A stretch of 64,000 nucleotides of DNA, taken from positions 8,432,001 through 8,496,000 of the forward strand of contig NC_043015.1 in assembly GCF_006345805.1 (NCBI RefSeq), in the 5' to 3' direction. The position numbers and the translations under genes are program-made. The first letter of the stretch is position 1. Every line of letters begins with the position of its first letter. Origin of the DNA: Octopus sinensis (lineage: Eukaryota). Below are positions 2,064 to 64,000 of the stretch, one piece after another. The notes under the pieces were generated by a model, which saw only the letters and a program-made list of their open reading frames with translations, was not told the origin of the DNA and ran no database searches.

Positions 2064-2107
<44 letters not shown>

Positions 2108-2111
<4 letters not shown>

Positions 2112-2353
2112 CTCAGGAACTATTAGCCCTGACACCGTGTATTAGCCGGTGCTTTCAAAGCGATGAATAGCTTTGAGGAAACAATGGTGCGCTTTGTTTT
2201 CTGACTTTATAATCATCTCATATGAATGACTTTTATTACTACCTCAGTCCATCTAAATGTATATATTTGTCGTTACCATTCATAAAAAGCCTTCTTCATA
2301 TTTTACCCTTACATTTCAACGTGCATTTTAGATTTTATTTTGTAACGTATTTC

Positions 2354-2409
<56 letters not shown>

Positions 2410-2660
2410 GTTCTCAGGAACTATTAGCCCTGACACCGTGTATTAGCCGGTGCTTTCAAAGCGATGAATAGCTTTGAGGAAACAATGGTGCGCTTTGTTT
2501 TCTGACTTTATAATCATCTCATATGAATGACTTTTATTACTACCTCAGTCCATCTAAATGTATATATTTGTCGTTACCATTCATAAAAAGCCTTCTTCAT
2601 ATTTTACCCTTACATTTCAACGTGCATTTTAGATTTTATTTTTGTAACGTATTTCAACTA
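2108..2660. repeat. Direct tandem duplication of ~250 bp unique sequence separated by (TA)n
   Basis: gttctcaggaactattagccc...gtaacgtatttcaac occurs at ~2109-2357 and ~2410-2658, almost identical, each followed by (TA)n. Confidence 0.9.
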
Positions 2661-2665
2661 TATAT

Positions 2666-2707
<42 letters not shown>

Positions 2708-2880: not shown

Positions 2881-3587
2881 GTAATCGTTAATGGTATGTT
2901 CTGTTCATTTCATATATAATTTTCATCACAATTTAAATACGATTTCGCATTTAAATTTAAATGTAAAGAAACACACACTCACACACACAACCACACACGC
3001 ACACACACTCACACTCACACTCACACTCACACGCACACTCAGTCATACATCCCCATATACAGTTCCTATATCATTTATTATTTACTTGTTTCAGTCATTG
3101 GATTGCGACCATGCTGGGGCATCGCCTAAGATAATAATCTTTTCTTAGTCTAAGAGATCGATCCTAGTACATTTTCGCGCAAATGTTGATAATTTCGACT
3201 TCGTGTATATATACATACACGCCCAAACATATAGATACATATACGTTTATACGTGTATTTTCGCTAGGTGTTTGGTGCAATATTTTATATGATATTTACG
3301 AAGTATTATGGCTTCTTAACTCCATGGGCCATAAGTTTCATTGATCTTCTGTCTAGACTAGCCGGTGCTTGCCACATTATGCCTACATCATCCATCACTT
3401 TAAAAATGCCTTTTAAAATAAACTGTTACTTCATGCAAAATATACATTTCGTACTTATTCACTCAACAACACTTCGGTTACATTTAGCACTGACATAATG
3501 ATTTTAATACTTTAGTATAGTCTCTGGTCACCTTTTCCACATTCGTACCAGATTCATTTTCTTTTTAGTGTTATGTGGTTGTTCATG

Positions 3588-3990: not shown

Positions 3991-4747
3991 TTTTGCACAT
4001 CGTCATCAATTCTTTTTTATTTTCACTTATTTTACTGTACATCAACCTGCCTTCTTTATGTTATTCCATTGCAGAACCTAAATTTTTTTCATTAATATTG
4101 CTTTTTTACTTTTGAGAAATACAGAATACAGCACTCTACATCGCCAAATGTTAAATGAATACACAGATTACATGCATGTTTTTATTATTATGGAACTTTG
4201 AAAGAGAAACTATATTTCATGTACGTAAAATATGATAATTTTTCCAACTTCTACTTTAAAACCAACCTACCAGTTGAAACTGTAGATGATAGTATTAAAG
4301 TATTCACTTTGGTTAAAATAACTCATTAATCAAAATTTACTACTTAATGATATTTTCCCGTGCTTATTTGATTAGAAATGTTTAATAATTAAAAGTATAA
4401 GGCTGTGAATTGGCTTAATTTTTAGTACATCGAACTACCTATTCTGCCTGTTTATGTTGTAAGTTCAAATTTATTACTCGGTTTGGTATAAAGCGTAATC
4501 AAGCACCGCTGAAATTGGTGATTTTGTGCCAGTAATTACAGCCACTATTGTGACATTGTAAATCGGACGACCAAGCGATGTCTTGCATTTGCTAACGTAT
4601 GATCTTTATTTGCTCACGAGTAAATACCGCCAGAAAATTTTACTTTATTTACACGCATGAATTCTATCTAAGGGTAAACATCCACCAAAAGGTACACGAT
4701 GATATCAATGCCAGACAATAGCTGAATATCATAGGTAACAAGTGATA

Positions 4748-5623: not shown

Positions 5624-5855
5624 TATTTCTTTACTACCCACAAGGGGCTAAACACAGAGGGGACAAACAAGGATAGACAAGCGGATTAAGTCGTTTAGAT
5701 CGATCCCAGTGCGTAACTGGTACTTAATTTATCGACCCCGAAAGGATGAAAGGCAAAGTCGACCTCAGCGGAATTTGAACTCAGAACATAACGGCAGACG
5801 AAATACGGCTACGCATTTCGCCCGGCGTGCTAAGGTTTCCGCCAGCTCACCGCCT
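5624..5855 (-). mobile_element. SINE family C, full length
   Basis: Minus strand aggcggtgagctggcggaaaccttagcacgccgggcg...ctgagttcaaattcc...gtcgactttgcctttcatcctttcggggtcgat; same family at 17.1 and 34.5 kb. Confidence 0.88.
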
Positions 5856-20519: not shown

Positions 20520-20560
20520 TACAGGTGAGTATATATTATAGGAAGTAGAATTCTTTAGAT

Positions 20561-20607
<47 letters not shown>

Positions 20608-20668
20608 TATATATATATATATATATATACCTATCTAAAGAATTCTACTTCCTATAATATATACTCAC

Positions 20669-20673
<5 letters not shown>
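20520..20673. repeat. Palindrome: 44-bp unique arms around a (TA)n centre
   Basis: tacaggtgag...tttagatagg (20520-20563) is the exact reverse complement of 20630-20673. Confidence 0.9.
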
Positions 20674-20727
<54 letters not shown>

Positions 20728-20747
20728 ATATATATATATGTCTCTCT

Positions 20748-21650
20748 CTATCCGCTCAGTCGAAGTCGACTATCGGTCATTCGTTGGATCAGTGTCTTCC
20801 AGTCATTTCTATCCTGGGCCGCTTCTCTCAGATTGGTTATGTCCATTCCGGTATCACTCTTGATGGTGTCAAGCCAGTGGGTTCTTGGTCGGCATCTTAC
20901 TCTCTTGCCACTGACCATTCCGAGCATGATGTCCTTCTCCAGGGATTTTCTCCGCATAATATGACCGAAATATGCCAATCTATGCTTGGTGATCCTAGCT
21001 CCTAGCGACATTTTCGGCCTTATCTGCTTAAGAACTTCTCCATTGTGAGCCTCACTGTCCATAGAATCCGTAAAAGCCTTCTCCAACACCAAAGCTAGAA
21101 TGCATTAATTCTGTTCTGGTCAGTTTTCTTTAGTCTCCAGGTCTCGCATACATATGTTGCTATTGGGAAGACACTTGCATTCACCAATTTGGTAGCGAGT
21201 CTGATGTCTCTACTCTTCCAGACCCTGCTCATGCTGACCATTGTCTCTCTGCCTAGTACTATCCGCCGTTTTATTTCTGGAGTGCTTTCACCATATCTTT
21301 TTTTTTGTGGAGCCAAGGAAGATGAAATCATCAACCACTTCGATGTCTTCATTAACGATCTCGATGCTGATGTTTGTTGTGGCTGATGTTGACATGATTG
21401 TCGTTTTCTTAACATTGAGGTACAGCCCGAATTTCTCACTCTCTTTCTTGACCAGCAGGACAAGATCCTCCAGATCCTTACCATTCTCCGCCAGCAGGTT
21501 TGAATCATCTGCATAGCGAAGGTTATTAATATTTCGTCCTCCAATCCTCACTCCAATGCAACTTTGCCGTGTGCCTTTTCCAATCTCAAACCAATCACTG
21601 TCGCCATATGGTATCCGTACAGTAGCCTCTTGGTTTTGATAGAGTGATCT
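20748..21650 (-). mobile_element. RTE-clade (BovB-like) LINE 3' fragment, decayed RT
   Basis: YQNQEATVR...[22 protein letters not shown], and C-terminal [18 protein letters not shown]...WLD...DRNDWK; internal deletion and frameshifts. Confidence 0.92.
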
Positions 21651-21689
21651 AATATATATATATGTATATATATATGTATATATACATAT

Positions 21690-21734
<45 letters not shown>

Positions 21735-22603
21735 ATATATATATATGTATATATGTATGTATGTATGTATGTATGTGTGTGTATAAATATAGATATAGAT
21801 AGAAGGAGAGAAAGGGAGATACAAAGAGAGAGAAGGGGCAGAAAAAACTTCAGGTTTTCTTGTAACGTGTACAGAAAGATTTTTTAATAGACGCGCAGAA
21901 AGAAATTCTGCCTTTCCTTGGCCTAAAACGAAGGGATTCATAATGCGCATTTCACGAAAGCGCACTCCCAGTTGTAACCGGTTCCTAAAGCTTGTCCACT
22001 TCACCAAGCCTGTTAAATAAACGCAGTTGTTTATGAAGCCGACGTCACAACAGTACTCCTACAAAAGGTACTTGTTTCTAAATTTACATCGATGTATGTG
22101 AAGGCAAATTTAAAAGACGTTATGCAGGCAATCACTCTTCTTTATAACTTATTAATAACAAAAATGTACGGGTACTATGTTAGTTAGGAATGAATGAGTT
22201 CTGAACGTGAAATGCTCCGCACATGTAATGAAGTGGAGAATAGTAGAGATATATACGCCATAGATATATTTATCAAAGAAAGACAAGTAATGCATTGAAA
22301 AGAAGTTGGATATAAAGCACAAAGATAAAAATAGTATGTAATGGAAATAGATTTCAAGAAATTCATAAATACACAAAGGTAATTAAATAAAAGTACGAAT
22401 ACAAAAGGTATTTTTAAATATTTAAAATTATCAAAAATTATTAAAAACATATTTCTGCCCAAGAAATTAATATATAAGGCAGTTCAATAGTAAAAATAAA
22501 ATACAACGGAGAATACTGTTTTATTTAGAGAAATCGCTCTAAAGAATCAAAGAGCGATGAAGCTTTAAAACAAAAATGATGTAGAAGTGCGCGAAAAAAT
22601 TCC

Positions 22604-22656
<53 letters not shown>

Positions 22657-22804
22657 CGTATATTTGCCATCTCAATATGGCAACCCTTAAGGGTGGATGC
22701 TACTGTAGCTTTTAGCCCCAGGAGGACACACTCCTCCAGCTGGCCATAGACACACTTTCTGTGTCCTGTCAGTATTTGCAAAGGGAAGTCATCCTTCCCG
22801 CCTT

Positions 22805-22874
22805 CAACTTATGATACACACGGACTCGAGTTTCGAGGTATTGACCTCTCGTCAGCGTGTGACAATCATAGTTG
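22805..22874 (-). ncRNA. Type I hammerhead ribozyme, array copy 1
   Basis: caacuaugau-ugu-CACACG-CUGACGA-GAGGU-caau-ACCUC-GAAA-C-ucga-GUC/CGUGUG-u-aucauaaguug; cut between 22823 and 22822. Confidence 0.95.
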
Positions 22875-23156
22875 TCGGCGAGAATTAGATTTCCTTCACA
22901 AATACTTATACTTTTTCCAGCGTCCACTGTCGCTGATATTGAAAAAGTGTAATCAAACAATGATAAATATCAAAGTGAGTTATATACAGTAGCGGTAACA
23001 CATCGTGACGTATATTTGCCATCTCAATATGGCTACCCCTAAGGGTGGATGCTACTGTAGTTTTTAGCCCCAGGAGGACACACTCCTCCAGCTGGCCATA
23101 GACACACTTTCTGTGTCCTGTCAGTATTTGCAAAGGGAAGTCATCCTTCCCGCCTT

Positions 23157-23226
23157 CAACTTATGATACACACGGACTCGAGTTTCGAGGTATTGACCTC
23201 TCGTCAGCGTGTGACATTCATAGTTG
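23157..23226 (-). ncRNA. Type I hammerhead ribozyme, array copy 2
   Basis: Core identical to copy 1; one substitution in distal stem I; cut between 23175 and 23174. Confidence 0.93.
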
Positions 23227-23507
23227 TCGGCGAGAATTAGATTTCCTTCACAAATATTATACTTTTTCCAGCGTCCACTGTCGCTGATATTGAAAAAGTG
23301 AAATCAAACAATGATAAATATCAAAGTGAGTTATATACAGTAGCGGTAACACATCGTGACGTATATTTGCCATCTCAATATGGCTAACCCTAAGGGTGGA
23401 TGCTACTGTAGTTTTTAGCCCCAGGAGGACACACTCCTCCAGCTGGCCATAGACACACTTTCTGTGTCTTGTCAGTATTTGCAAAGGGAAGTCATCCTTC
23501 CCGCCTT

Positions 23508-23577
23508 CAACTTATGATACACACGGACTCGAGTTTCGAGGTATTGACCTCTCGTCAGCGTGTGACAATCATAGTTG
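23508..23577 (-). ncRNA. Type I hammerhead ribozyme, array copy 3
   Basis: Identical to copy 1; cut between 23526 and 23525. Confidence 0.95.
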
Positions 23578-23799
23578 TCGGCGAGAATTAGATTTCCTTC
23601 ACAAATACTTATACTTTTTCCAGCGTCCACTGTCGCTGATATTGAAAAAGTGAAATCAAACAATGATAAATATCAAAGTGAGTTATATACAGTAGCGGTA
23701 ACACATCGTGACGTATATTTGCCATCTCAATATGGCAACCCCTAAGGGTGGATGCTACTGTATATATATATATATATATACTAAACTTTAAATAGGCTA

Positions 23800-24330
23800 T
23801 GCATATGAAATTGTCCAGCAGCTCATACGTTACCAAGAAGCAAGCCTGCAAAATCGTAGGAGCTTGATTCGACGGTTAATATATCTCGCTCCTGGAACAT
23901 AATCAACTTCCCGCTTTGAAAACTGGACACTTTATAAAGTTTCTCTATGTTCCGTGCCCGTGTGGCGTACATTTTCTCCAATGTGAAACACTAAATTTGT
24001 GGTGCGGTGCATGCTGCTTCCATGAATTTCTATATGATTTTGGCCCGGCTCGTTGTTCATCTTTTTACTGGATACTTGAAATACTACCTATGCAAATATA
24101 GCCTCGTTCTGAAGCAATTCAATGAAACCTGTGCATAATTTGTACATACTGCTGTTAATCATTGTAATCCTAGCTTTATACCCAATACCCTTAATTATAC
24201 AGTTTCCATCTAAAAGACATCTGCTCGTGTCTTTACAGTTACATTTTAGTTCAGGGTTCCTGTCACCGTTAGTTTTGTTAAGAACGGCTGTATTATGTAA
24301 GTTTAGAGAAGAGGCGAAATAGTTGGAAAA
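23800..24330 (-). mobile_element. Penelope-like element, decayed GIY-YIG endonuclease region
   Basis: HNTAVLN...KCNCKDTSRCLLDGNCIIKGIGYKARIT...CTG resembles the CNC..CPL.G.C..VVYKA..YIG pattern of PLE endonucleases. Confidence 0.7.
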
Positions 24331-32659: not shown

Positions 32660-33620
32660 GTTATTATCATCATCATCATCATCATCATCATTATTATTGT
32701 TCAGGTCAGCGCTTAGAATAGAACAGGGAATCTTGGGGCCATATGCCCGTGAACAATCATGGAGTGAATTTTAGTGCATATAAATCTAATATTTTTCAAT
32801 CCTTCCGTCACACTGGTTCCCATATGCTGTTCATATCTACACTCGATCTGCTTAGGAGGTGTTCTCTGTCTATTATTTCAACTTCATTCCACAGAGTTGG
32901 GTAGTCTCAATCTTTTCCATATATGATCAGCTATACCATATTTATCAATATCTCCTCGTGTCGCAGCTTTGCAATTTTCCTCTACCCTTATTTTGAGTGG
33001 GTGGCATGTTTCGCCTTTGTATAACATGCTGCATGTGATGGAGTAAACGCGGTCTTTGGTCATATCCTCATCTATTGGTTGTTTTACTCAAATGAAATTG
33101 TGAATTGTTGTATTACGCTTTAATACGGTCCTGATGTTATATGTGCTGCATATCTTTTGTATCTTTTCAGGGAGGCCTTTCACATAGGATATACAGACTG
33201 TGGCCAAATCCTCTTTCTTCTCCTTCATAATTGCAGTGGATAGTATACTTTGGGAGTAGTTGTTGCTTAACATATCGATATTAATCTTGATAATTTCTTC
33301 GTGGTGTGTATCACGATCGCTACATATATTGTTTGCACGATGTTTTAGGCTCTGAGCAATCCCTCACTTTACACTGTATGGATGGTGGAAATTGAAATTG
33401 AGATATCTTCCAATAAAGGTCCGTTTGAGGTATACAGATGTTTTGAATCCATACTTGGCGCGTGTTGTTAATACGTCCAGTAATGCCACCTGATATTCTT
33501 TTCCCTTTTCCATTGTGAACTGTACTGATGGCCTTATTGAGTTCACATGATATAACAGTACTTGGATATCTTCTTGGTGGGGTCAGAGTATAAAGGTGCC
33601 ATCAACATATCGTGAGAGGA
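32440..33620 (-). mobile_element. Penelope-like element 3' half (RT thumb, GIY-YIG, 3' end)
   Basis: RYVDGTF...NSIRPSVQFTMEK...LLDVL...TSVY.K.T..GRYLNFN.HHP; YVKGLPEKI; VYSITC..YKGET; (TTA/TCA)n insertion at 32.6-32.7 kb. Confidence 0.88.
32495..32532 (-). ncRNA. Decayed minimal hammerhead-like motif at PLE 3' end
   Basis: CUGAAGA-aggauagaggguauaucagcc-GAAAC-GUU; stem II partly mispaired, stem I partner not retained. Confidence 0.5.
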
Positions 33621-33679
33621 TCCATCACAACCGTTGGTAAAAATAGCAACTAAATAATAAAATCAAAAAGAAGTTATCT

Positions 33680-34870
33680 TCATTACTTAGGAAAATATAC
33701 AGAGATGATGATAGAAAGAGAAGGGAACAAGATTTGGAAAAGTCGTACATGAAAGAATTTGAAATGGTGAGGACACGCCAGATTAAGAAGTTTATGAAAC
33801 TCAAAGGTCAGAGAATGAAGACTGAAATCCGTCTCACACATTTGAAAGCAATAATAAATTTTTAGTAGCCGACATCTAGAAAGCTCTGAATAAGCAATAC
33901 TGAACAAAGGTCTCACAGTTCTTGATCAAGAACAAGGATCACTTTTCACCTATGAAGTACAGACAACTGACACAACACCACAGTAAACTACCACACCTGT
34001 ACGGTTCCCCTAAGATTCACAAGAATGTTATTCCATTAAGACCTATAGTGAGCTGTACAGGTTTAGCATGTCATCCAGTGAGGCGCTCACTTGTGGACAT
34101 AGTCAGTCCACTAGCAGGAAAGTCAACATCGTACGTGAAGAATTCCTCCCACTTCACAGAAATGATCAAGGATACCCCATTGAATCCAAGCAGATGATGA
34201 GTCTAGATGTGATAAGCCCGTTCACCACTGGTGAAGCACTATCGGTGATACAAGAAAAACTAGTGACAGACACCCACCCAATAGAAAGCACTAGTATACC
34301 AATAAGGAACTTGATGGAAATGTTGACCGTCTGTATAAAAAAACTACCAAATTCAGTATAGACACTGATATATATCGACAAGAGTAGGGTTTAGCTCTGG
34401 GATCAGCATTATCACCGGTAATAGCTAATATATACAAGGAATACTTTGGGAGTGTGGCATTAGGATCAACACTACTAAAACCAACGCTATGGCTACGGTA
34501 TGTTGATGGCAGAAACGTTAGCACGCCGGGCGATATGCGTAGCCGTATTTCGTATGCCGTTACGTTCTGAGTTCAAATTCTGCCGAGGTCGACTTTGCCT
34601 TTCATCCTTTCGGGGTCGATTAAATAAGTACTAGTTACACATTGGAGTCGATATAATCGACTTAATTCGTTTGTCTGTCCTTCTTTGTCCTCTCTGTGCT
34701 TAGCCCTTTGTGGGTACTGAAGAAATAGATATGTTGATGACACATTTATGCTCTCGCCCCACCAGTAAGATGTCCAAGTGCTGTTAGATAATGTAAACTC
34801 AATAAAGCCATCCATACAGTTCAAAATAGAAAAAAAAACCCACAATAAGCTAACATTCTTGGACGTATCA
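33680..34870 (+). mobile_element. Penelope-like element 5' half (N-terminus and RT core), inverted relative to the 3' half
   Basis: INF.SSRHL...LNKGL; LYGSPKIHK..IPLRPIVS; LDVISPFT; GLALGSALSPVIANIY; WLRYVDDTF; TFLDV. Confidence 0.88.
34509..34729 (+). mobile_element. SINE family C inserted in PLE RT, 10-bp TSD
   Basis: tatgttgatg at 34499-34508 and 34730-34739. Confidence 0.92.
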
Positions 34871-47100: not shown

Positions 47101-47773
47101 AATTTCTACGCCGTTAAGTGAGGTCTGCAAAGGATTTGGAGGAAACATCCTCGCAGGATACCTCATATTCACGTTGTCGATTTGGTAACCAAGGTACAGG
47201 AAAGCTTGAACTATTAAAACTAGAGAAAAATATGGATTGCATAGCATTCATGCAAAACCCCAAGGCAGTTGTGGTCCTAGGCAATGTAATCAGGTGGATG
47301 TTTATAACACATAATGAAAAGCATGCGTATAGACAGTTTTTCTCAATGATATTTTTAGTAATCGCACTTGTGGTCGCATTGAGGCAAAATCGTTCAGCTA
47401 TCCTCATAAGAATAATAACACGTCTCAAATTCGACTCAGTGTTAATTACCACATGGTTTTCATCATAAAAGGTGTCGTATTTCTTTTACAGTGTTAATTT
47501 TATGAATATTGAAATCTGAACTGAGTTCCAAACGTTTGCCTTCCGGCGTGTTTCTTTCCATATATTCTCTCTAGTTCATAGTTAGGAGTTGCCAATACAG
47601 TAACTCCTATTGGCAATAAACTTAAACAAAGCTGGAAATACATTTTTGTGATCAGCGAACTTGGAATAGGGTGTTCTGTTGTTTACTTTAAAATATGCTT
47701 TGCCTTGAAAACAATAATATTTTTAAGCATTATTAAATCTCAGAATGAGATGTAAACAGTAATCGCTCGATAA

Positions 47774-47974
47774 TGTAAAGTATGGAAGCCATCTTAATAT
47801 GGCTAACCACAAAAGGCGGGTGTTACTGTAGCTCTATAGCCCCAGGAGATCATCGTCTCCAACTGGCTTTAGGCTAAAGCCAGCTGGAGACGATGATCTC
47901 CTGGGGCTATAGAGCTACAGTAACACCCCTCCCCTTTGTGGTTAGCCATATTAAGATGGCTTCTATACTTTACA
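47774..47974. repeat. ~200-bp near-perfect hairpin (about 98-bp arms, 3-nt loop)
   Basis: tgtaaagtatggaagccatcttaatatggc...ctggcttta-ggc-taaagccagctgg...gatggcttctatactttaca. Confidence 0.92.
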
Positions 47975-48760
47975 ATAATATTTAAATTGTCTTGAAAGCA
48001 TGAATGTCACAAAGACTGTCATATAACAGCATATATTGTGAATGCACATTTGGAGAACAAAGAACAAACTGCAGATTTCAACACAAATATTTGAGTGACA
48101 AACATTATTATGTATGTAGGTGCCTGTTTTGTGAAGAGAATAAATTCCTTTAATACTACAAACATATGAATCATTTTCATGACCCAAAGTGTGTGGACGT
48201 CTGGACGAAACATTACAATGTCAGTAAATAAATTGCGATGCCCGTTGTCATAGTTTGTTTTACAGTTTTAGCTCACGCGTAATCAGTAAAATAACATACG
48301 TACAAGCCCGAAAGTTGATCGACCAGTAAAGACAATATAACGGCAAGTTACTTTCTTCCATACCATGGACAAACATCAATGTCCGACTTTTACTGCTCAG
48401 CCAAATGTATTTCTACTAATATTGAAAGTTAGGAAACAATTTTATGTAATTCCATTAGTTCACCTTGGGGGGAAAATCAATAATATTAAGTTATTAGATT
48501 AGTTTACCTCTCTTACCACATTGAAGGGGAGGCATGGATACATGTGCAATAAGCAATAAGTAGACAGTTATTTTGAAAAGTATTTGGCGACATATTGCTG
48601 GACTTTTTACTAAGCAAATTACGTTTGATCATCGACCAATTGCAAGGTTTGAACTTTGGAATAAGCTTTGAGGCTAAACTGAAAACAGGCCCGGTGGAAA
48701 TTGTTGACTATTGACTACAGATCTAATTACTCTCAATTATTATATAGATAGAGGCATGCC

Positions 48761-61968: not shown

Positions 61969-62048
<80 letters not shown>

Positions 62049-62149
62049 GGATATGTGTGTGCGTGTGTGTGTGTACAAATCAAAAGTGTCTTTACCCACA
62101 CTTACACCACATGAAAGTAAGCAAACCTGCATAATTTTTGCCACTACAT

Positions 62150-63620
62150 GTGTAGAAAGAGAGGCAGCAACATTTGATTGCATCAATATCAATGAGGAAG
62201 TAAATCCGACAATATATTTTGTAGATGCAAATCAACCGCTATCCTGGTTATATTCCCACCAAAACCATCGCTTTCTGCAACTAGTAAGCTCCCTGTCAGG
62301 TAGAAGCTGCCTGACACAGCTCTTAAAGCAGCTTCTCAACAACTCAAATATAGACGTGATATATTTAGAATTTTTAAAATCCCTTGATAAAGTCAACCAT
62401 CGTATGACATATCATAAACTGAGTAATCTTGGCATCGTCGGAAAATTGGCTTTAACATAGAAGTGAAATAGTGGTGTCCAACGGATCCACCTCCAAAGTA
62501 AAACAACTGATGAGCGGTGATCCAGATGTCACTGTCTTGGTGCTACAGCTATTCATAGTGGCCTTCTGAGACGCACTTAACCACACTTGATAGCTATGTA
62601 GATGTCACAAAATGTTTTCAGAGGATAGATAACCTTAGAGACGTTGTGCCTCTGAAGCAGTATTCAGAAGCAATTTGCAGATGGGCTGGGGAAAGTGACT
62701 TAGAGTTTAATGCTGGACAATTCCAAGCCCTACGCTACCAACACACGAAAATCAATACAAAGCAGAGAGGATATACTGGCAATCCCTGAACCAAAACCAG
62801 TGCGTGTCTTGTGTACAGACATGAGGAATGATGCATCTTTCCAGGAGAATAATAAGTTGGCAATAAAATGCAGGCGGTTGGCCAGATCGATCCTTCAAAC
62901 TTTCAGAACGGGTGAACAGGAAATGATAGTCCGCTGGGGAACATACGTCATTAGCCGTTTAGATTACTACTCCCAACTATGGTCATCACACTGTATAAAA
63001 TTCACTGTGGACTTCGAAGCAATCCGGCGAATCTACACAAAAAAGATCGAATCAATGCGACAAGTGATTCCTTGTTGAACGAAACAGGACTGATGTGTCA
63101 TTCATTACATTGCGAAACAAGAATTAAATTCGTTTTGCCAAACGCGAATTCTCAAGAATTTACCTGAAAGTGAATTCTTCTGCAAGCTCAAGATTTCTGT
63201 CATTTGTTTAACAAACACAGCAAGGGTAGTTGCATGATGGATGTTTAGATTTACTGTAAGCACGTATGTAACCTAAATTCTTTATACGATCAGTTTCGTG
63301 ATATGTAAACTATGCTACATGGAGTGACTGAAAAAGTTAATTAGTTACTCTCTAGACTGAAATATATCTCGAACTCATAGAAGTTCTAAGAAAGTTTGGC
63401 ATTGTCAGTTACACAATGGTCAAGATACCAGAGCAAATACTACAACGCGTTGGGCTTCTTGGGCCCACAGGTCTTCAATATCTCCTCACAAAACCTGAGA
63501 TACGTAAATTTTCTTTTGATAATGGTAGCCTTTTGTATCTGCTTCAGGAAGTTGTCAAAGTACTCTCCATTGATGATGTAGCCCTTTTGAAGATAGTCCA
63601 AATCTACAATATTTTGGCTT
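62150..63620 (+). mobile_element. CR1-clade LINE RT remnant
   Basis: GRSCLTQLL, DVIYLEFLKSLDKVNH, SYVD.TK, SRLDYYSQLWS, GPQVFN; unrelated sequence interrupts ~63075-63395. Confidence 0.85.
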
Positions 63621-64000
63621 CTCAAAAGTTGATGCCATTCGGTTCCATGCAGATGAACCTACTTTCGCCATTTGAGGGCGGGTCAAGACAGGAGTTTTCA
63701 CAGCATGGGTTGTGTCTTTGGCTCAAAGTGTTCAAAACACCATTCATCGTGGGTTAGGAAATGTTCGAGAAAACCAGCGGAATCTTCCTCAAACTATATC
63801 AGAATTCGCCGTAATGTAATCAGCATAGTGCGCATCTGATCACGTGTCAGAAGACATGGCACCCACCGAAGAGAAACCCTCTTGCTCTCTGGTTCATTGT
63901 GCTGAATATTCTCAATCCTCTAACGGGATATGCTGAAAGTATTGGCTATTTGATTTATAGTCAGTCGCCTATCATTCATCACCATGTGGTGAACACGTTC

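What the first reader, a model, noticed from the sequence alone, without database searches (positions are those of the whole stretch)
22653..23760. Tandem 352-bp array with three intact extended hammerhead ribozymes: retrozyme-like circRNA source
Seen: each unit has, on the minus strand, a textbook type I HHR: CUGACGA, perfect 5-bp stem II with CAAU loop, GAAA, 8-bp palindrome ACUCGAGU as stem III, GUC site, and a stem I of 6 bp + UGU/U internal loop + 10 bp. The rest of the unit has several hairpins (gccat/atggc, ggagga/tcctcc, gggaag/cttccc). Units differ by a few bases, so they are unlikely to be a pure assembly echo. Established: stem I bulge to loop II contacts activate natural type I HHRs, and metazoan non-LTR retrozymes are tandem HHR repeats that yield small circular RNAs. 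Inference: a read-through transcript would release 351- and 352-nt monomers able to circularise and be retrotransposed in trans. I cannot check whether this family is already described in octopus.
Basis: partly seen in the sequence, partly recalled or inferred. Interest (0 to 1): 0.92.

Follow-up and report, generated by a model that had tools for sequence, protein, structure and literature searches.

The report
Octopus hammerhead-ribozyme tandem repeat (retrozyme)
This is a short tandem repeat in an octopus-like genome in which every 352-bp unit carries an apparently intact self-cleaving hammerhead ribozyme; it is a typical, previously undescribed cephalopod member of the known animal "retrozyme" class of small non-coding retrotransposons, so it is real but not a new kind of thing.

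Summary
Window 22653-23762 is a 352-bp tandem repeat of 3.15 units, about 98.6% identical. On the minus strand it carries three identical type I hammerhead ribozymes (HHRs). They score 32.2 bits against Rfam Hammerhead_1, E 1.2e-5, just under the gathering score of 34.

Two details need correcting. Helix III (ACUCGAGU) can form only 2 bp plus a UCGA loop within one motif; it is 8 bp only in a double hammerhead. Distal stem I is 6 bp, a bulged A, then 4 bp.

The best reading is a metazoan non-LTR retrozyme (Cervera & de la Peña 2020). New support comes from 308 kb of sampled Octopus vulgaris genome plus this window:
- Six related loci were found.
- Five independent 3' junctions fall within 4 nt (unit positions 54-57), while the 5' ends vary. 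That is a retrotransposition footprint.
- Three loci sit inside (TA)n tracts.
- Five base pairs show compensatory changes.
- One O. vulgaris copy lies head-to-head with a 5'-truncated Penelope-like element (reverse-transcriptase motif plus GIY-YIG endonuclease).

The reverse transcriptase next to the array is an RTE-type LINE, not a Penelope-like element. Self-cleavage, expression and circularisation remain untested. Verdict: new member of a known kind, modest interest.

The parts
22653..23762 (-). Tandem array: 3 full units (23411-23762, 23059-23410, 22708-23058) plus a 55-nt partial unit (22653-22707). RNA sense is the minus strand.
   Evidence: TRF; BLAST; alignment A1.
23520..23564 (-). 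Hammerhead ribozyme 1 (45-nt core; extended stem I reaches about 23507-23577). Predicted cleavage 3' of C at 23526.
   Evidence: Rfam RF00163, 32.2 bits, E 1.2e-5; descriptor scan.
23169..23213 (-). Hammerhead ribozyme 2, predicted cleavage 3' of C at 23175. A U-to-A change in distal stem I enlarges the internal loop.
22817..22861 (-). Hammerhead ribozyme 3 (extended form 22804-22874), predicted cleavage 3' of C at 22823.
23175..23525 (-). Predicted 351-nt monomer RNA released by cuts at HHR1 and HHR2.
   Evidence: Coordinates derived.
22823..23174 (-). Predicted 352-nt monomer RNA released by cuts at HHR2 and HHR3. Minimum free energy -129.7 kcal/mol linear (z -8.9) and -124.6 circular; 65% of bases paired; GC 43%.
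22666..22681 (-). Conserved hairpin GCCAU-AUUGAG-AUGGC (unit positions 27-42), 13 nt upstream of the recurrent 3' terminus at unit position 55. Its stem is invariant in all 10 aligned relatives.
22605..22652 (.). (TA)24 tract abutting the 3' end of the array (RNA sense).
   Evidence: TRF; sequence.
23763..23780 (.). (TA)9 tract abutting the 5' end of the array. Together with 22605-22652 it implies insertion into a single (TA)n microsatellite, with no separate target-site duplication discernible.
   Evidence: Sequence.
47709..47976 (.). Foldback made of two inverted 5'-truncated copies of a related family (about 80% identical to unit positions ~312-352 plus 1-55). The short arm 47879-47976 (+) ends at unit position 56. 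The long arm 47709-47874 (-) reads on to about position 115. There is no HHR.
32884..34361 (.). Decayed Penelope-like element remnants about 9 kb from the array. 33136-33624 (-) matches the O. vulgaris PLE fragment. 32884-33063 (-) and 33922-34361 (+) look PLE-like by eye only.
   Evidence: tblastn E 1e-9, 25% identity over 167 aa; ORFs; Pfam negative; no HHR found by Rfam.
20748..21650 (-). 5'-truncated, frameshifted RTE/BovB-type LINE reverse-transcriptase fragment. It is not part of the element and is listed because it is the nearest reverse transcriptase.
   Evidence: Pfam RVT_1; homologues from Bos, Anolis, Apostichopus 'endonuclease-reverse transcriptase' and Octopus vulgaris.

Best explanation
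The array is a non-autonomous, non-LTR retrozyme of an octopus-like cephalopod.

**Shown from sequence.**
- There are three head-to-tail 352-bp units. On one strand each encodes a type I hammerhead ribozyme with a complete catalytic core, a 5-bp stem II, a long interrupted stem I and a minimal palindromic helix III.
- The unit is non-coding and strongly self-complementary.
- The array and its relatives have a recurrent 3' end (unit positions 54-57) and variable 5' ends.
- They tend to lie inside (TA)n tracts.
- Several stems keep pairing through compensatory changes.

**Inferred by analogy with characterised animal retrozymes.**
1. A read-through minus-strand transcript is cut after GUC in each unit. 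Neighbouring motifs probably pair their ACUCGAGU segments into an 8-bp shared helix III (a double hammerhead) to help this.
2. [quoted passage not shown]
3. A host RtcB-type ligase circularises them.
4. A reverse transcriptase supplied in trans copies the circle or a multimer. It starts near the conserved GCCAU...AUGGC hairpin, about 171 nt downstream of the cleavage site, from a nick in a (TA)n tract. The most likely source is a Penelope-like element with a GIY-YIG endonuclease.
5. Going round more than once yields tandem copies (here 3.15 units). Stopping early yields 5'-truncated solo copies.
For: **Anatomy.**
- Array structure.
- HHRs: Rfam 32.2 bits, E 1.2e-5, three times. The descriptor gives 3 hits against 0.025 expected.
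- Monomer fold: z -8.9, GC 43%.
- Double hammerhead: two 71-nt HHR segments are predicted to cofold at -53.1 kcal/mol, against 2 x -24.2 as monomers.
- No coding capacity: the array ORFs have no homologues and are absent from the protein collection.

**Relatives.**
- They lie at L009:4465-4688, L006:7097-7580, L006:34868-35010, L002 and window 47709-47976. That is six loci in 372 kb.
- Five independent 3' junctions fall at unit positions 54-57 of 352, while 5' ends fall at about positions 1, 186-199, 227, 312 and 344.
- Three of the six loci, including this array, are bracketed directly by (TA)n. Such tracts cover only 1.6-5% of the sequence.
- Named structure on alignment A3: 97.7% of cells are paired, against 31-48% when partners are slid. 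Five pairs show double compensatory changes, against 0-1 in the slid controls (RNAalifold).

**Penelope-like element (PLE) link.**
- L009:3267-4424 (-) encodes a YLDD reverse-transcriptase motif followed by a C-terminal GIY-YIG domain (Pfam 26.3 bits, cut-off 22.6).
- That fragment is 5'-truncated at the same (AT)19.5 tract that abuts the 5'-truncated retrozyme copy, and its 3' end abuts another (TA)n tract.
- PLE-like fragments occur at five places in the 372 kb, including window 33136-33624.

**Literature.**
- PMC7229834 defines the class, including 350-390-bp mussel repeats that yield abundant circRNAs. It proposes target-primed copying of circRNA by PLEs.
- PMC8557442 reports (TA)n insertion bias, 5' truncation and inverted 5'-truncated copies for PLEs, and PLEs in Octopus species.
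- bioRxiv 10.64898/2026.07.22.740005 links vertebrate retrozymes to PLE pseudo-LTRs.
Against: - No expression, cleavage or circularisation data can be obtained here.
- The HHR scores just below Rfam's gathering threshold (32.2 against 34).
- The canonical single-motif fold (-18.3 kcal/mol) is less stable than a competing fold (-24.2), and helix III is only 2 bp within one motif. Activity is therefore not guaranteed.
- Only about four independent lineages underlie the covariation count.
- The only other copy with an HHR-like core (L009) has A10.1-U11.1 in place of G-C and gets no Rfam match at E <= 0.1.
- The O. vulgaris sample (308 kb around RTE-derived gene models) is small and not random, so copy number and target preference are rough.
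- Some relatives (the L006 and window foldback long arms, and L006:34.9k) read through position 55 to about position 115-125, so there may be two alternative 3' ends.
- The PLE as mobiliser rests on co-occurrence and shared insertion habits, not on a shared 3' sequence; none was seen.
Confidence: 0.75

Rival explanations
1. The array is an ordinary pseudo-LTR or partial-tandem remnant of a Penelope-like element (PLE), not an independent non-autonomous element.
For: PLEs carry HHRs in their pseudo-LTRs and insert as partial tandems and inverted truncated copies (PMC8557442). One O. vulgaris copy lies head-to-head with a PLE fragment. A PLE-like remnant lies in the same window at 32.9-34.4 kb.
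Against: There are three complete 352-bp units with no PLE coding sequence between or beside them. The only YxDD-bearing ORF of note in the window is the RTE LINE. The nearest PLE-like remnant is about 9 kb away. The 3' region of the L009 PLE fragment shows no similarity to the unit and no HHR. This HHR is the canonical long-stem type, whereas the literature describes minimal variants in PLEs (PMC7229834).
Confidence: 0.08
2. It is a small DNA-level tandem duplication (micro-satellite DNA) carrying a fossil hammerhead, with no current RNA processing, circles or mobility.
For: There are only 3.15 units. The 98.6% identity between units could come from recent unequal exchange. No expression data exist. 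The single-motif HHR fold is not the predicted minimum.
Against: The HHR core is identical and complete in all three units, while about 10 substitutions lie elsewhere. The array ends at the same unit position as four independent relatives. Relatives are 5'-truncated, dispersed and (TA)n-flanked. Stems covary. Characterised members of the class are highly expressed (PMC7229834).
Confidence: 0.1
3. It is a retrozyme-like element mobilised by an RTE-type LINE rather than by a Penelope-like element.
For: An RTE fragment lies 650 bp away and is itself next to TA tracts. RTE copies are abundant in the sampled octopus sequence.
Against: The homologous RTE copy in L001 is not followed by (TA)n at the same point. 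No 3' sequence is shared between the RTE and the unit. The inverted head-to-head truncated pairs and the (TA)n bias are described PLE habits (PMC8557442). A PLE fragment shows the same direct (TA)n abutment.
Confidence: 0.05
4. It is an assembly artefact, that is, a collapsed or echoed repeat.
For: Repeats flanked by microsatellites are hard to assemble.
Against: Units differ at about 10 positions and by one indel. Related copies exist in an independent chromosome-level assembly.
Confidence: 0.02

Closest known systems
Metazoan non-LTR retrozymes (Cervera & de la Peña 2020, PMC7229834), especially the Mytilus galloprovincialis 350-390-bp repeats
   Same: A type I HHR in every unit of a short tandem repeat. 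Unit size of 352 bp. GC below 45%. No LTR, primer-binding site, polypurine tract or ORF. A highly self-paired monomer. Helix III of 2 bp capped by a tetraloop, as described for invertebrate HHRs. Co-occurrence with PLEs.
   Different: The host clade is different: no cephalopod retrozyme appears in the searchable literature. No sequence from the mussel or any other described retrozyme was compared with this unit. Here a recurrent 3' junction and a (TA)n target can be read off. RNA data are lacking.
Newt and axolotl satellite 2 / HHR_Amex repeats (330-350 bp)
   Same: Similar unit length, a type I HHR, a palindromic helix III loop, and a predicted advantage of double-hammerhead (dimeric) cleavage (PMC7229834).
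   Different: [quoted passage not shown] This array has 3.15 units and a 2-bp helix III.
Hammerheads in Penelope-like element pseudo-LTRs (Cervera & de la Peña 2014; PMC8557442)
   Same: Type I topology, tandem and inverted truncated arrangements, (TA)n insertion bias, and physical neighbourhood in octopus (L009).
   Different: No reverse transcriptase or GIY-YIG ORF is attached to the array. Stems I and II are canonical and long, not the minimal variant.
Schistosoma Sm-alpha SINE-like HHR repeats and cave-cricket pDo500 satellite (from my own knowledge and the PMC7229834 introduction)
   Same: Short non-coding repeats with a type I HHR that has a weak helix III and a stem I internal loop.
   Different: No tRNA-like region or Pol III boxes were recognised here. 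I did not test this beyond the window-wide Rfam search.
Plant LTR retrozymes (PMC4918200)
   Same: Non-autonomous, HHR-processed, with a circRNA intermediate in the proposed life cycle.
   Different: The plant elements have type III HHRs inside LTRs, a primer-binding site and polypurine tract, 4-bp target-site duplications and mobilisation by Gypsy elements. None of these is present here.
Viroid-like and HDV-like circular RNA replicons
   Same: Small, self-paired RNAs with an HHR.
   Different: This one is encoded in DNA as a repeat and has an HHR in one polarity only. No match was found in the viral or metagenome contig collections.

Membership tests
Metazoan non-LTR retrozyme | Type I hammerhead with a complete catalytic core in each repeat unit | tested here: met
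   Rfam RF00163, three matches at 32.2 bits, E 1.2e-5 (1.8 bits below gathering). The strict descriptor gives 3 hits against 0.025 expected.
Metazoan non-LTR retrozyme | Head-to-tail tandem repeats with a unit of about 150-450 bp | tested here: met
   Period 352, 3.2 copies, 98% matches.
Metazoan non-LTR retrozyme | Low GC (below 45-50%); no LTR, primer-binding site or polypurine tract; no coding capacity | tested here: met
   GC 43%. ORFs are at most 80 aa, have no homologues and are not in the protein collection. No terminal repeats other than the units themselves.
Metazoan non-LTR retrozyme | Monomer RNA highly self-paired | tested here: met
   -129.7 kcal/mol, z -8.9 against 100 shuffles. 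Circular fold -124.6 kcal/mol with 65% of bases paired.
Metazoan non-LTR retrozyme | Dispersed copies with signs of retrotransposition | tested here: met
   Six related loci in 372 kb. The 3' junctions fall at unit positions 54-57 in five independent cases, with variable 5' ends. Three loci lie inside (TA)n tracts. A target-site duplication cannot be read because the target is a microsatellite.
Metazoan non-LTR retrozyme | Self-cleavage at the predicted site | not testable with these tools
   Needs in vitro transcription. Folding shows only that a double-hammerhead dimer is favoured.
Metazoan non-LTR retrozyme | Expression as linear and circular RNAs of unit length | not testable with these tools
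   No transcriptome data are reachable. Fishing with array ORFs as pseudo-proteins found nothing.
Metazoan non-LTR retrozyme | Co-existence with autonomous Penelope-like elements in the genome | tested here: met
   An ORF fragment with a reverse-transcriptase YLDD motif plus a GIY-YIG domain lies at L009:3267-4424. PLE-like fragments occur at five places, including window 33136-33624. Octopus PLEs are also reported in PMC8557442. No intact PLE was seen.
Penelope-like element pseudo-LTR | Repeat is contiguous with a PLE ORF (reverse transcriptase plus GIY-YIG) | tested here: not met
   No such ORF lies within about 9 kb of the array. The adjacent reverse transcriptase is RTE-type.
Classical satellite DNA with HHR (newt satellite 2 type) | Long arrays of tens to thousands of units | tested here: not met
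   There are 3.15 units here, and the relatives are solo or paired fragments.
Plant LTR retrozyme | Type III HHRs within LTRs, a primer-binding site and polypurine tract, and 4-bp target-site duplications | tested here: not met
   The topology is type I and there are no LTRs.
Viroid-like / HDV-like circRNA replicon | Ribozymes in both polarities and/or no DNA copy | tested here: not met
   The HHR is on the minus strand only, and the element is a genomic DNA repeat.

The most novel reading that the evidence does not exclude
The recurrent 3' junction lies about 171 nt downstream of the ribozyme cut and 13 nt past an invariant hairpin. Taken with an insertion longer than one unit and the (TA)n targets, it may be the genomic footprint of target-primed rolling-circle reverse transcription. 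On this reading, copying starts at a defined internal site of a circular RNA and is carried out by a (TA)n-nicking Penelope-like element. That site would be the first cis-acting start site defined for animal retrozyme mobilisation, and it would give a direct handle on the poorly understood PLE integration mechanism.
Probability: 0.3. Interest if true: 0.6.

Novelty: new member of a known kind. Interest (0 to 1): 0.3.

Why it matters
It adds cephalopods to the animals that carry canonical type I hammerhead retrozymes. The only prior trace I found is a count of 235 Hammerhead_1 loci in the giant squid genome, which was not interpreted. It points to a probably abundant and unannotated family: about one related fragment per 60 kb in the small sample. 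Such a family would be a source of small circular RNAs in octopus tissues.

The more useful by-product is mechanistic. The fixed 3' junction, the variable 5' ends, the inverted truncated pairs, the (TA)n targets and the head-to-head neighbour PLE fragment are the habits described for Penelope-like elements. They therefore support the current proposal that PLEs mobilise animal retrozymes, and they give a testable start site for reverse transcription.

It does not change the picture of what these elements are.

Tried and rejected
- **Rfam at gathering thresholds on the whole window:** no hit. The HHRs appear only in the E-value search.
- **Fishing for other copies with array ORFs as pseudo-proteins:** no candidates for the 63-aa HHR-spanning ORF or the 75-aa ORF. 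None of ten window ORFs is in the 15-billion-protein collection.
- **Exact and degenerate HHR-core scans of viral and metagenome contigs:** 0 hits in four scans. The bacterial/archaeal genome collection was not scanned because it is irrelevant to an animal repeat.
- **Rfam on the O. vulgaris L009 copy:** no Hammerhead match at E <= 0.1. I therefore do not call that copy an intact ribozyme.
- **A second HHR-like motif family (L006:38241-38307, L008:22156-22235):** it passes my descriptor and shows compensatory changes by eye, but it has no Rfam support. It is left as a side note.
- **Pfam on the window's PLE-like fragments:** negative. They rest on tblastn to the L009 PLE fragment only.
- **Rfam around the window PLE remnant:** no hammerhead.
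- **(TA)n as the tail of the neighbouring RTE LINE:** rejected, because the homologous RTE copy in L001 continues into unique sequence at that point.
- **A full Pfam scan of all 305 window ORFs:** prepared but not run, as too costly for the question. It was replaced by a YxDD-motif scan and a tblastn with the PLE fragment.
- **The sigma-70 promoter/terminator scanner:** not used, because it does not apply to an animal genome.
- **L002 copies:** they lie inside a 3.8-kb near-perfect palindrome, so I counted them as one instance.
Full report
**1. The observation**

The minus strand of window 22300-24100 and Tandem Repeats Finder (22653-23762, period 352, 3.2 copies, 98% matches) confirm the array. 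A BLAST of unit 2 against the window gives 98.6% identity to the other two full units and a 55-nt partial fourth unit. In the alignment of the units, about ten positions differ, one of them an indel. None lies in the 45-nt hammerhead core. One U-to-A change lies in distal stem I of unit 2.

The array sits between (TA)24 (22605-22652) and (TA)9-10 (up to 23780). The window as a whole is 33% GC. Perfect (TA)n tracts of at least 6 repeats make up 3.9% of it.

**2. The ribozymes**

- At gathering thresholds Rfam reports nothing in the window.
- In the E-value search of 22300-24100, three identical full-length matches to Hammerhead_1 (RF00163) appear on the minus strand at 23520-23564, 23169-23213 and 22817-22861. 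Each scores 32.2 bits against a gathering score of 34, with E 1.2e-5.
- A strict descriptor of my own finds exactly these three sites in the window. It finds 0.025 per dinucleotide-preserving shuffle.
- The sequence is CACACG-CUGACGA-GAGGU-CAAU-ACCUC-GAAA-CUCGAGUC|CGUGUG.

Two details need correcting:

- The 8-nt palindrome ACUCGAGU cannot be a hairpin stem. Alone it does not fold. Within one motif it gives only A15.1-U16.1 and C15.2-G16.2 closed by UCGA. As a self-duplex it is worth -10.7 kcal/mol.
- Distal stem I is 6 bp, a bulged A, then 4 bp.

Two 71-nt HHR segments are predicted to cofold as a strand-swapped double hammerhead with an 8-bp shared helix III. That dimer is -53.1 kcal/mol, against 2 x -24.2 for the monomers. 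The canonical single-motif fold is -18.3 kcal/mol and is not the minimum.

The literature describes a 2-bp helix III capped by a tetraloop as the usual invertebrate form. It also reports dimer-dependent cleavage for amphibian repeats (PMC7229834). The Rfam consensus itself writes helix III as a loop-less palindrome.

**3. The rest of the unit**

- The cut-to-cut 352-nt RNA folds at -129.7 kcal/mol, z -8.9. As a circle it folds at -124.6 kcal/mol with 65% of bases paired, and its GC is 43%.
- The complementary strand also folds well (z -7.0) but has no hammerhead.
- ORFs in the array are at most 80 aa. They have no homologues and are absent from the protein collection.

**4. Surroundings**

The nearest reverse transcriptase lies 650 bp downstream on the same strand (20748-21650). 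It is a frameshifted, 5'-truncated LINE.

- Pfam gives RVT_1.
- Its homologues come from Bos, Anolis, an Apostichopus 'endonuclease-reverse transcriptase' and, at 66-72% identity, Octopus vulgaris.
- I therefore read it as RTE/BovB-type, and I read the source organism as an octopus or close relative.

It is not a Penelope-like element (PLE). The only other ORF in the window carrying that loose motif is a 49-residue stretch with no reverse-transcriptase character.

**5. Relatives elsewhere**

Public-collection scans with the HHR core found nothing. Using RTE-derived O. vulgaris gene models as handles, I fetched nine stretches of the O. vulgaris assembly GCA_951406725.2, 307.6 kb in all. I searched them together with the window by blastn and by nhmmer with a profile of alignment A3. 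Including the array, six related loci appear in 372 kb.

| Locus | What it is |
|---|---|
| L009:4465-4688 (+) | Solo 5'-truncated copy, 87% identical to unit positions 198-352 plus 1-48. It retains CUGAUGA...GAAA...GUA but has A10.1-U11.1, and Rfam does not match it at E <= 0.1. |
| L006:7097-7580 | Inverted pair of truncated copies, about 80% identical, with a dead core (CCGACGA). |
| Window 47709-47976 | The same foldback family with its centre deleted. |
| L002 | A 60-nt 3'-terminal fragment, duplicated within a 3.8-kb palindrome. |
| L006:34868-35010 (-) | A more diverged truncated copy. |

**6. Footprints of retrotransposition**

Lined up on the conserved hairpin GCCAU-N6-AUGGC (unit positions 27-42), homology to the unit stops at the following points (compare the read-through rows there):

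| Junction | Unit position |
|---|---|
| The array (...AAAUAUACGUCAC\|(TA)24) | 55 |
| L009 (...AAAUAUGCAACAC\|(TA)8) | 55 |
| Short arm of the window foldback | 56 |
| Short arm of the L006 foldback | 54 |
| L002 | 57 |

- The 5' ends lie at about positions 1 (after 3.15 units), 186-199, 227, 312 and 344.
- Five independent junctions within 4 nt of a 352-nt unit, combined with scattered 5' ends, is the pattern left by target-primed reverse transcription of the hammerhead-sense RNA.
- The terminus is 171 nt downstream of the cleavage site (position 236). The template was therefore not simply the linear cleaved monomer read from its 3' end. A circle or a multimer primed internally fits better, and so does the more-than-one-unit length of the array.
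- Some copies (the long arms of both foldbacks, and L006:34.9k) continue to about positions 115-125, so there may be a second end.
- Three of the six loci (the array, L009 and L006:34.9k) abut (TA)n on both sides. Such tracts cover 1.6-5% of the sampled DNA, which argues for a target preference.

**7. Conservation of structure**

On alignment A3 (10 rows, about four independent lineages) I named a structure made of HHR stems I-III plus five hairpins.

- It is 97.7% paired, against 31-48% when the 3' partners are slid.
- It has five pairs with changes on both sides: stem II 10.1/11.1 G-C to A-U, two pairs of GGGAAG/CUUCCC, one pair of GGACACA/UGUGUCU and one pair of GGAGGA/UCCUCC.
- The slid controls give 0-1 such pairs. 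RNAalifold independently recovers three of them.
- The sample is small, but the direction is clear: the RNA structure is maintained.

**8. Link to Penelope-like elements**

[quoted passage not shown] - This fragment is 5'-truncated exactly at the (AT)19.5 tract (4426-4464) whose other side is the 5'-truncated retrozyme copy. Its 3' end abuts another (TA)n tract at 2573-2592.
- tblastn with this fragment finds four more PLE-like pieces: L009:6495-7259, L009:19053-19784, L008:3678-4675 and window 33136-33624 (E 1e-9).
- The window piece has GIY-YIG-like and PLE N-terminal-like ORFs beside it by eye. Pfam does not confirm these, and no hammerhead is found there.
- PLEs are reported to insert preferentially into (TA)n, to be 5'-truncated, to form partial tandems and adjacent inverted truncated copies, and to occur in Octopus species (PMC8557442).
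- PLEs were proposed as the mobilisers of animal retrozymes (PMC7229834). A 2026 preprint links vertebrate retrozymes to PLE pseudo-LTRs (10.64898/2026.07.22.740005).
- The octopus data fit that proposal, but they rest on co-occurrence and shared habits. No shared 3' sequence was seen.
- The RTE alternative is weakened because the homologous RTE copy in L001 is not followed by (TA)n.

**9. What is known already**

- The class was defined in 2020: type I HHRs in 150-450-bp tandem repeats, low GC, no LTR features, and abundant linear and circular RNAs. It includes 350-390-bp mussel repeats (PMC7229834).
- I found no paper on octopus or cephalopod retrozymes.
- The giant squid genome paper lists 235 Hammerhead_1 loci without comment (PMC6962438).

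**10. Verdict**

- The interpretation as a retrozyme-like source of about 350-nt RNAs is supported at the sequence level, and is strengthened by the retrotransposition footprints.
- Cleavage, expression and circularisation are inferred, not shown.
I score it 0.3.
- The most interesting residue is the defined 3' start site and the (TA)n/PLE association, which a genome-wide census could settle quickly.

Noticed in passing
window 2065-2706: A second tandem structure: 2.1 copies of a 301-bp period, each a 248-bp unit (GTTCTCAGGAACTATTAGCC...) followed by a (TA)22-27 tract. It has no hammerhead, no Rfam match and no similarity in the O. vulgaris sample. It may be another (TA)n-associated element duplicated together with its microsatellite.
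   Followed up: partly
window 20540-20760: A long interrupted (TA)n tract bracketed by a perfect 24-nt inverted repeat (AGGAAGTAGAATTCTTTAGATAGG ... CCTATCTAAAGAATTCTACTTCCT), directly at the 3' end of the RTE fragment. It could be a hairpin-forming or MITE-like structure.
   Followed up: no
window 20748-21650 and 21652-21801: The RTE-type LINE fragment has three frameshifts or breaks and is cut off at its 5' side by an (ATAT)n/(TA)n tract. Its O. vulgaris homologue (L001:16446-17433) is 90-93% identical at the DNA level.
   Followed up: partly
window 32884-34361: Decayed Penelope-like remnants in a head-to-head arrangement: a reverse-transcriptase C-terminal part and a GIY-YIG-like ORF on the minus strand, and an N-terminal-like ORF (PKIHK...PLRPIVS) on the plus strand. 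Support is tblastn E 1e-9 only; Pfam is negative.
   Followed up: partly
window ~62000-63800 (+): Six-frame ORFs with LINE reverse-transcriptase-like motifs (for example ...DVIYLEFLKSLDKVNH...) appeared in the ORF dump. Pfam found nothing at E <= 0.01 for three of these ORFs.
   Followed up: no
L006:38241-38307 (+) and L008:22156-22235 (-): A second, unrelated hammerhead-like motif family in O. vulgaris. It has CUGA[U/A]GA, a stem II carrying a 30-nt insert (CGCCUAGCAAAU...AUUUGCUAAAAAA), GAAAC, GUA/GUC and a 6-bp stem I. By eye, several pair changes between the two copies are compensatory. L008 also holds an inverted 272-nt copy at 22608-22879. There is no Rfam support.
   Followed up: partly
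L002:1137-4926: A 3.8-kb near-perfect palindrome centred at 3090/3091 (arms 96-100% complementary) in the O. vulgaris assembly. It is either a real inverted duplication or an assembly artefact. It contains the two L002 copies of the 3' module.
   Followed up: no
window 5654-5739 and 34612-34697; many places in L003-L007: An 86-nt sequence repeated at 87-97% identity across the window and the O. vulgaris loci, sometimes in tandem (L003:23930-24561). It is probably a SINE or satellite unit.
   Followed up: no
whole window: Very high density of (TA)n microsatellites: 89 perfect tracts of at least 6 repeats, 3.9% of the window. Several transposable-element fragments end at such tracts.
   Followed up: partly
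window 22653-23762, unit positions ~20-27: The short segment CCCUUAGGGGUWGCC just upstream of the conserved hairpin differs in all four copies within the array (GGGGTTGCC, GGGTTAGCC, GGGGTAGCC, AGGGTTGCC). It is a local hotspot of variation in an otherwise 98.6% identical array.
   Followed up: no
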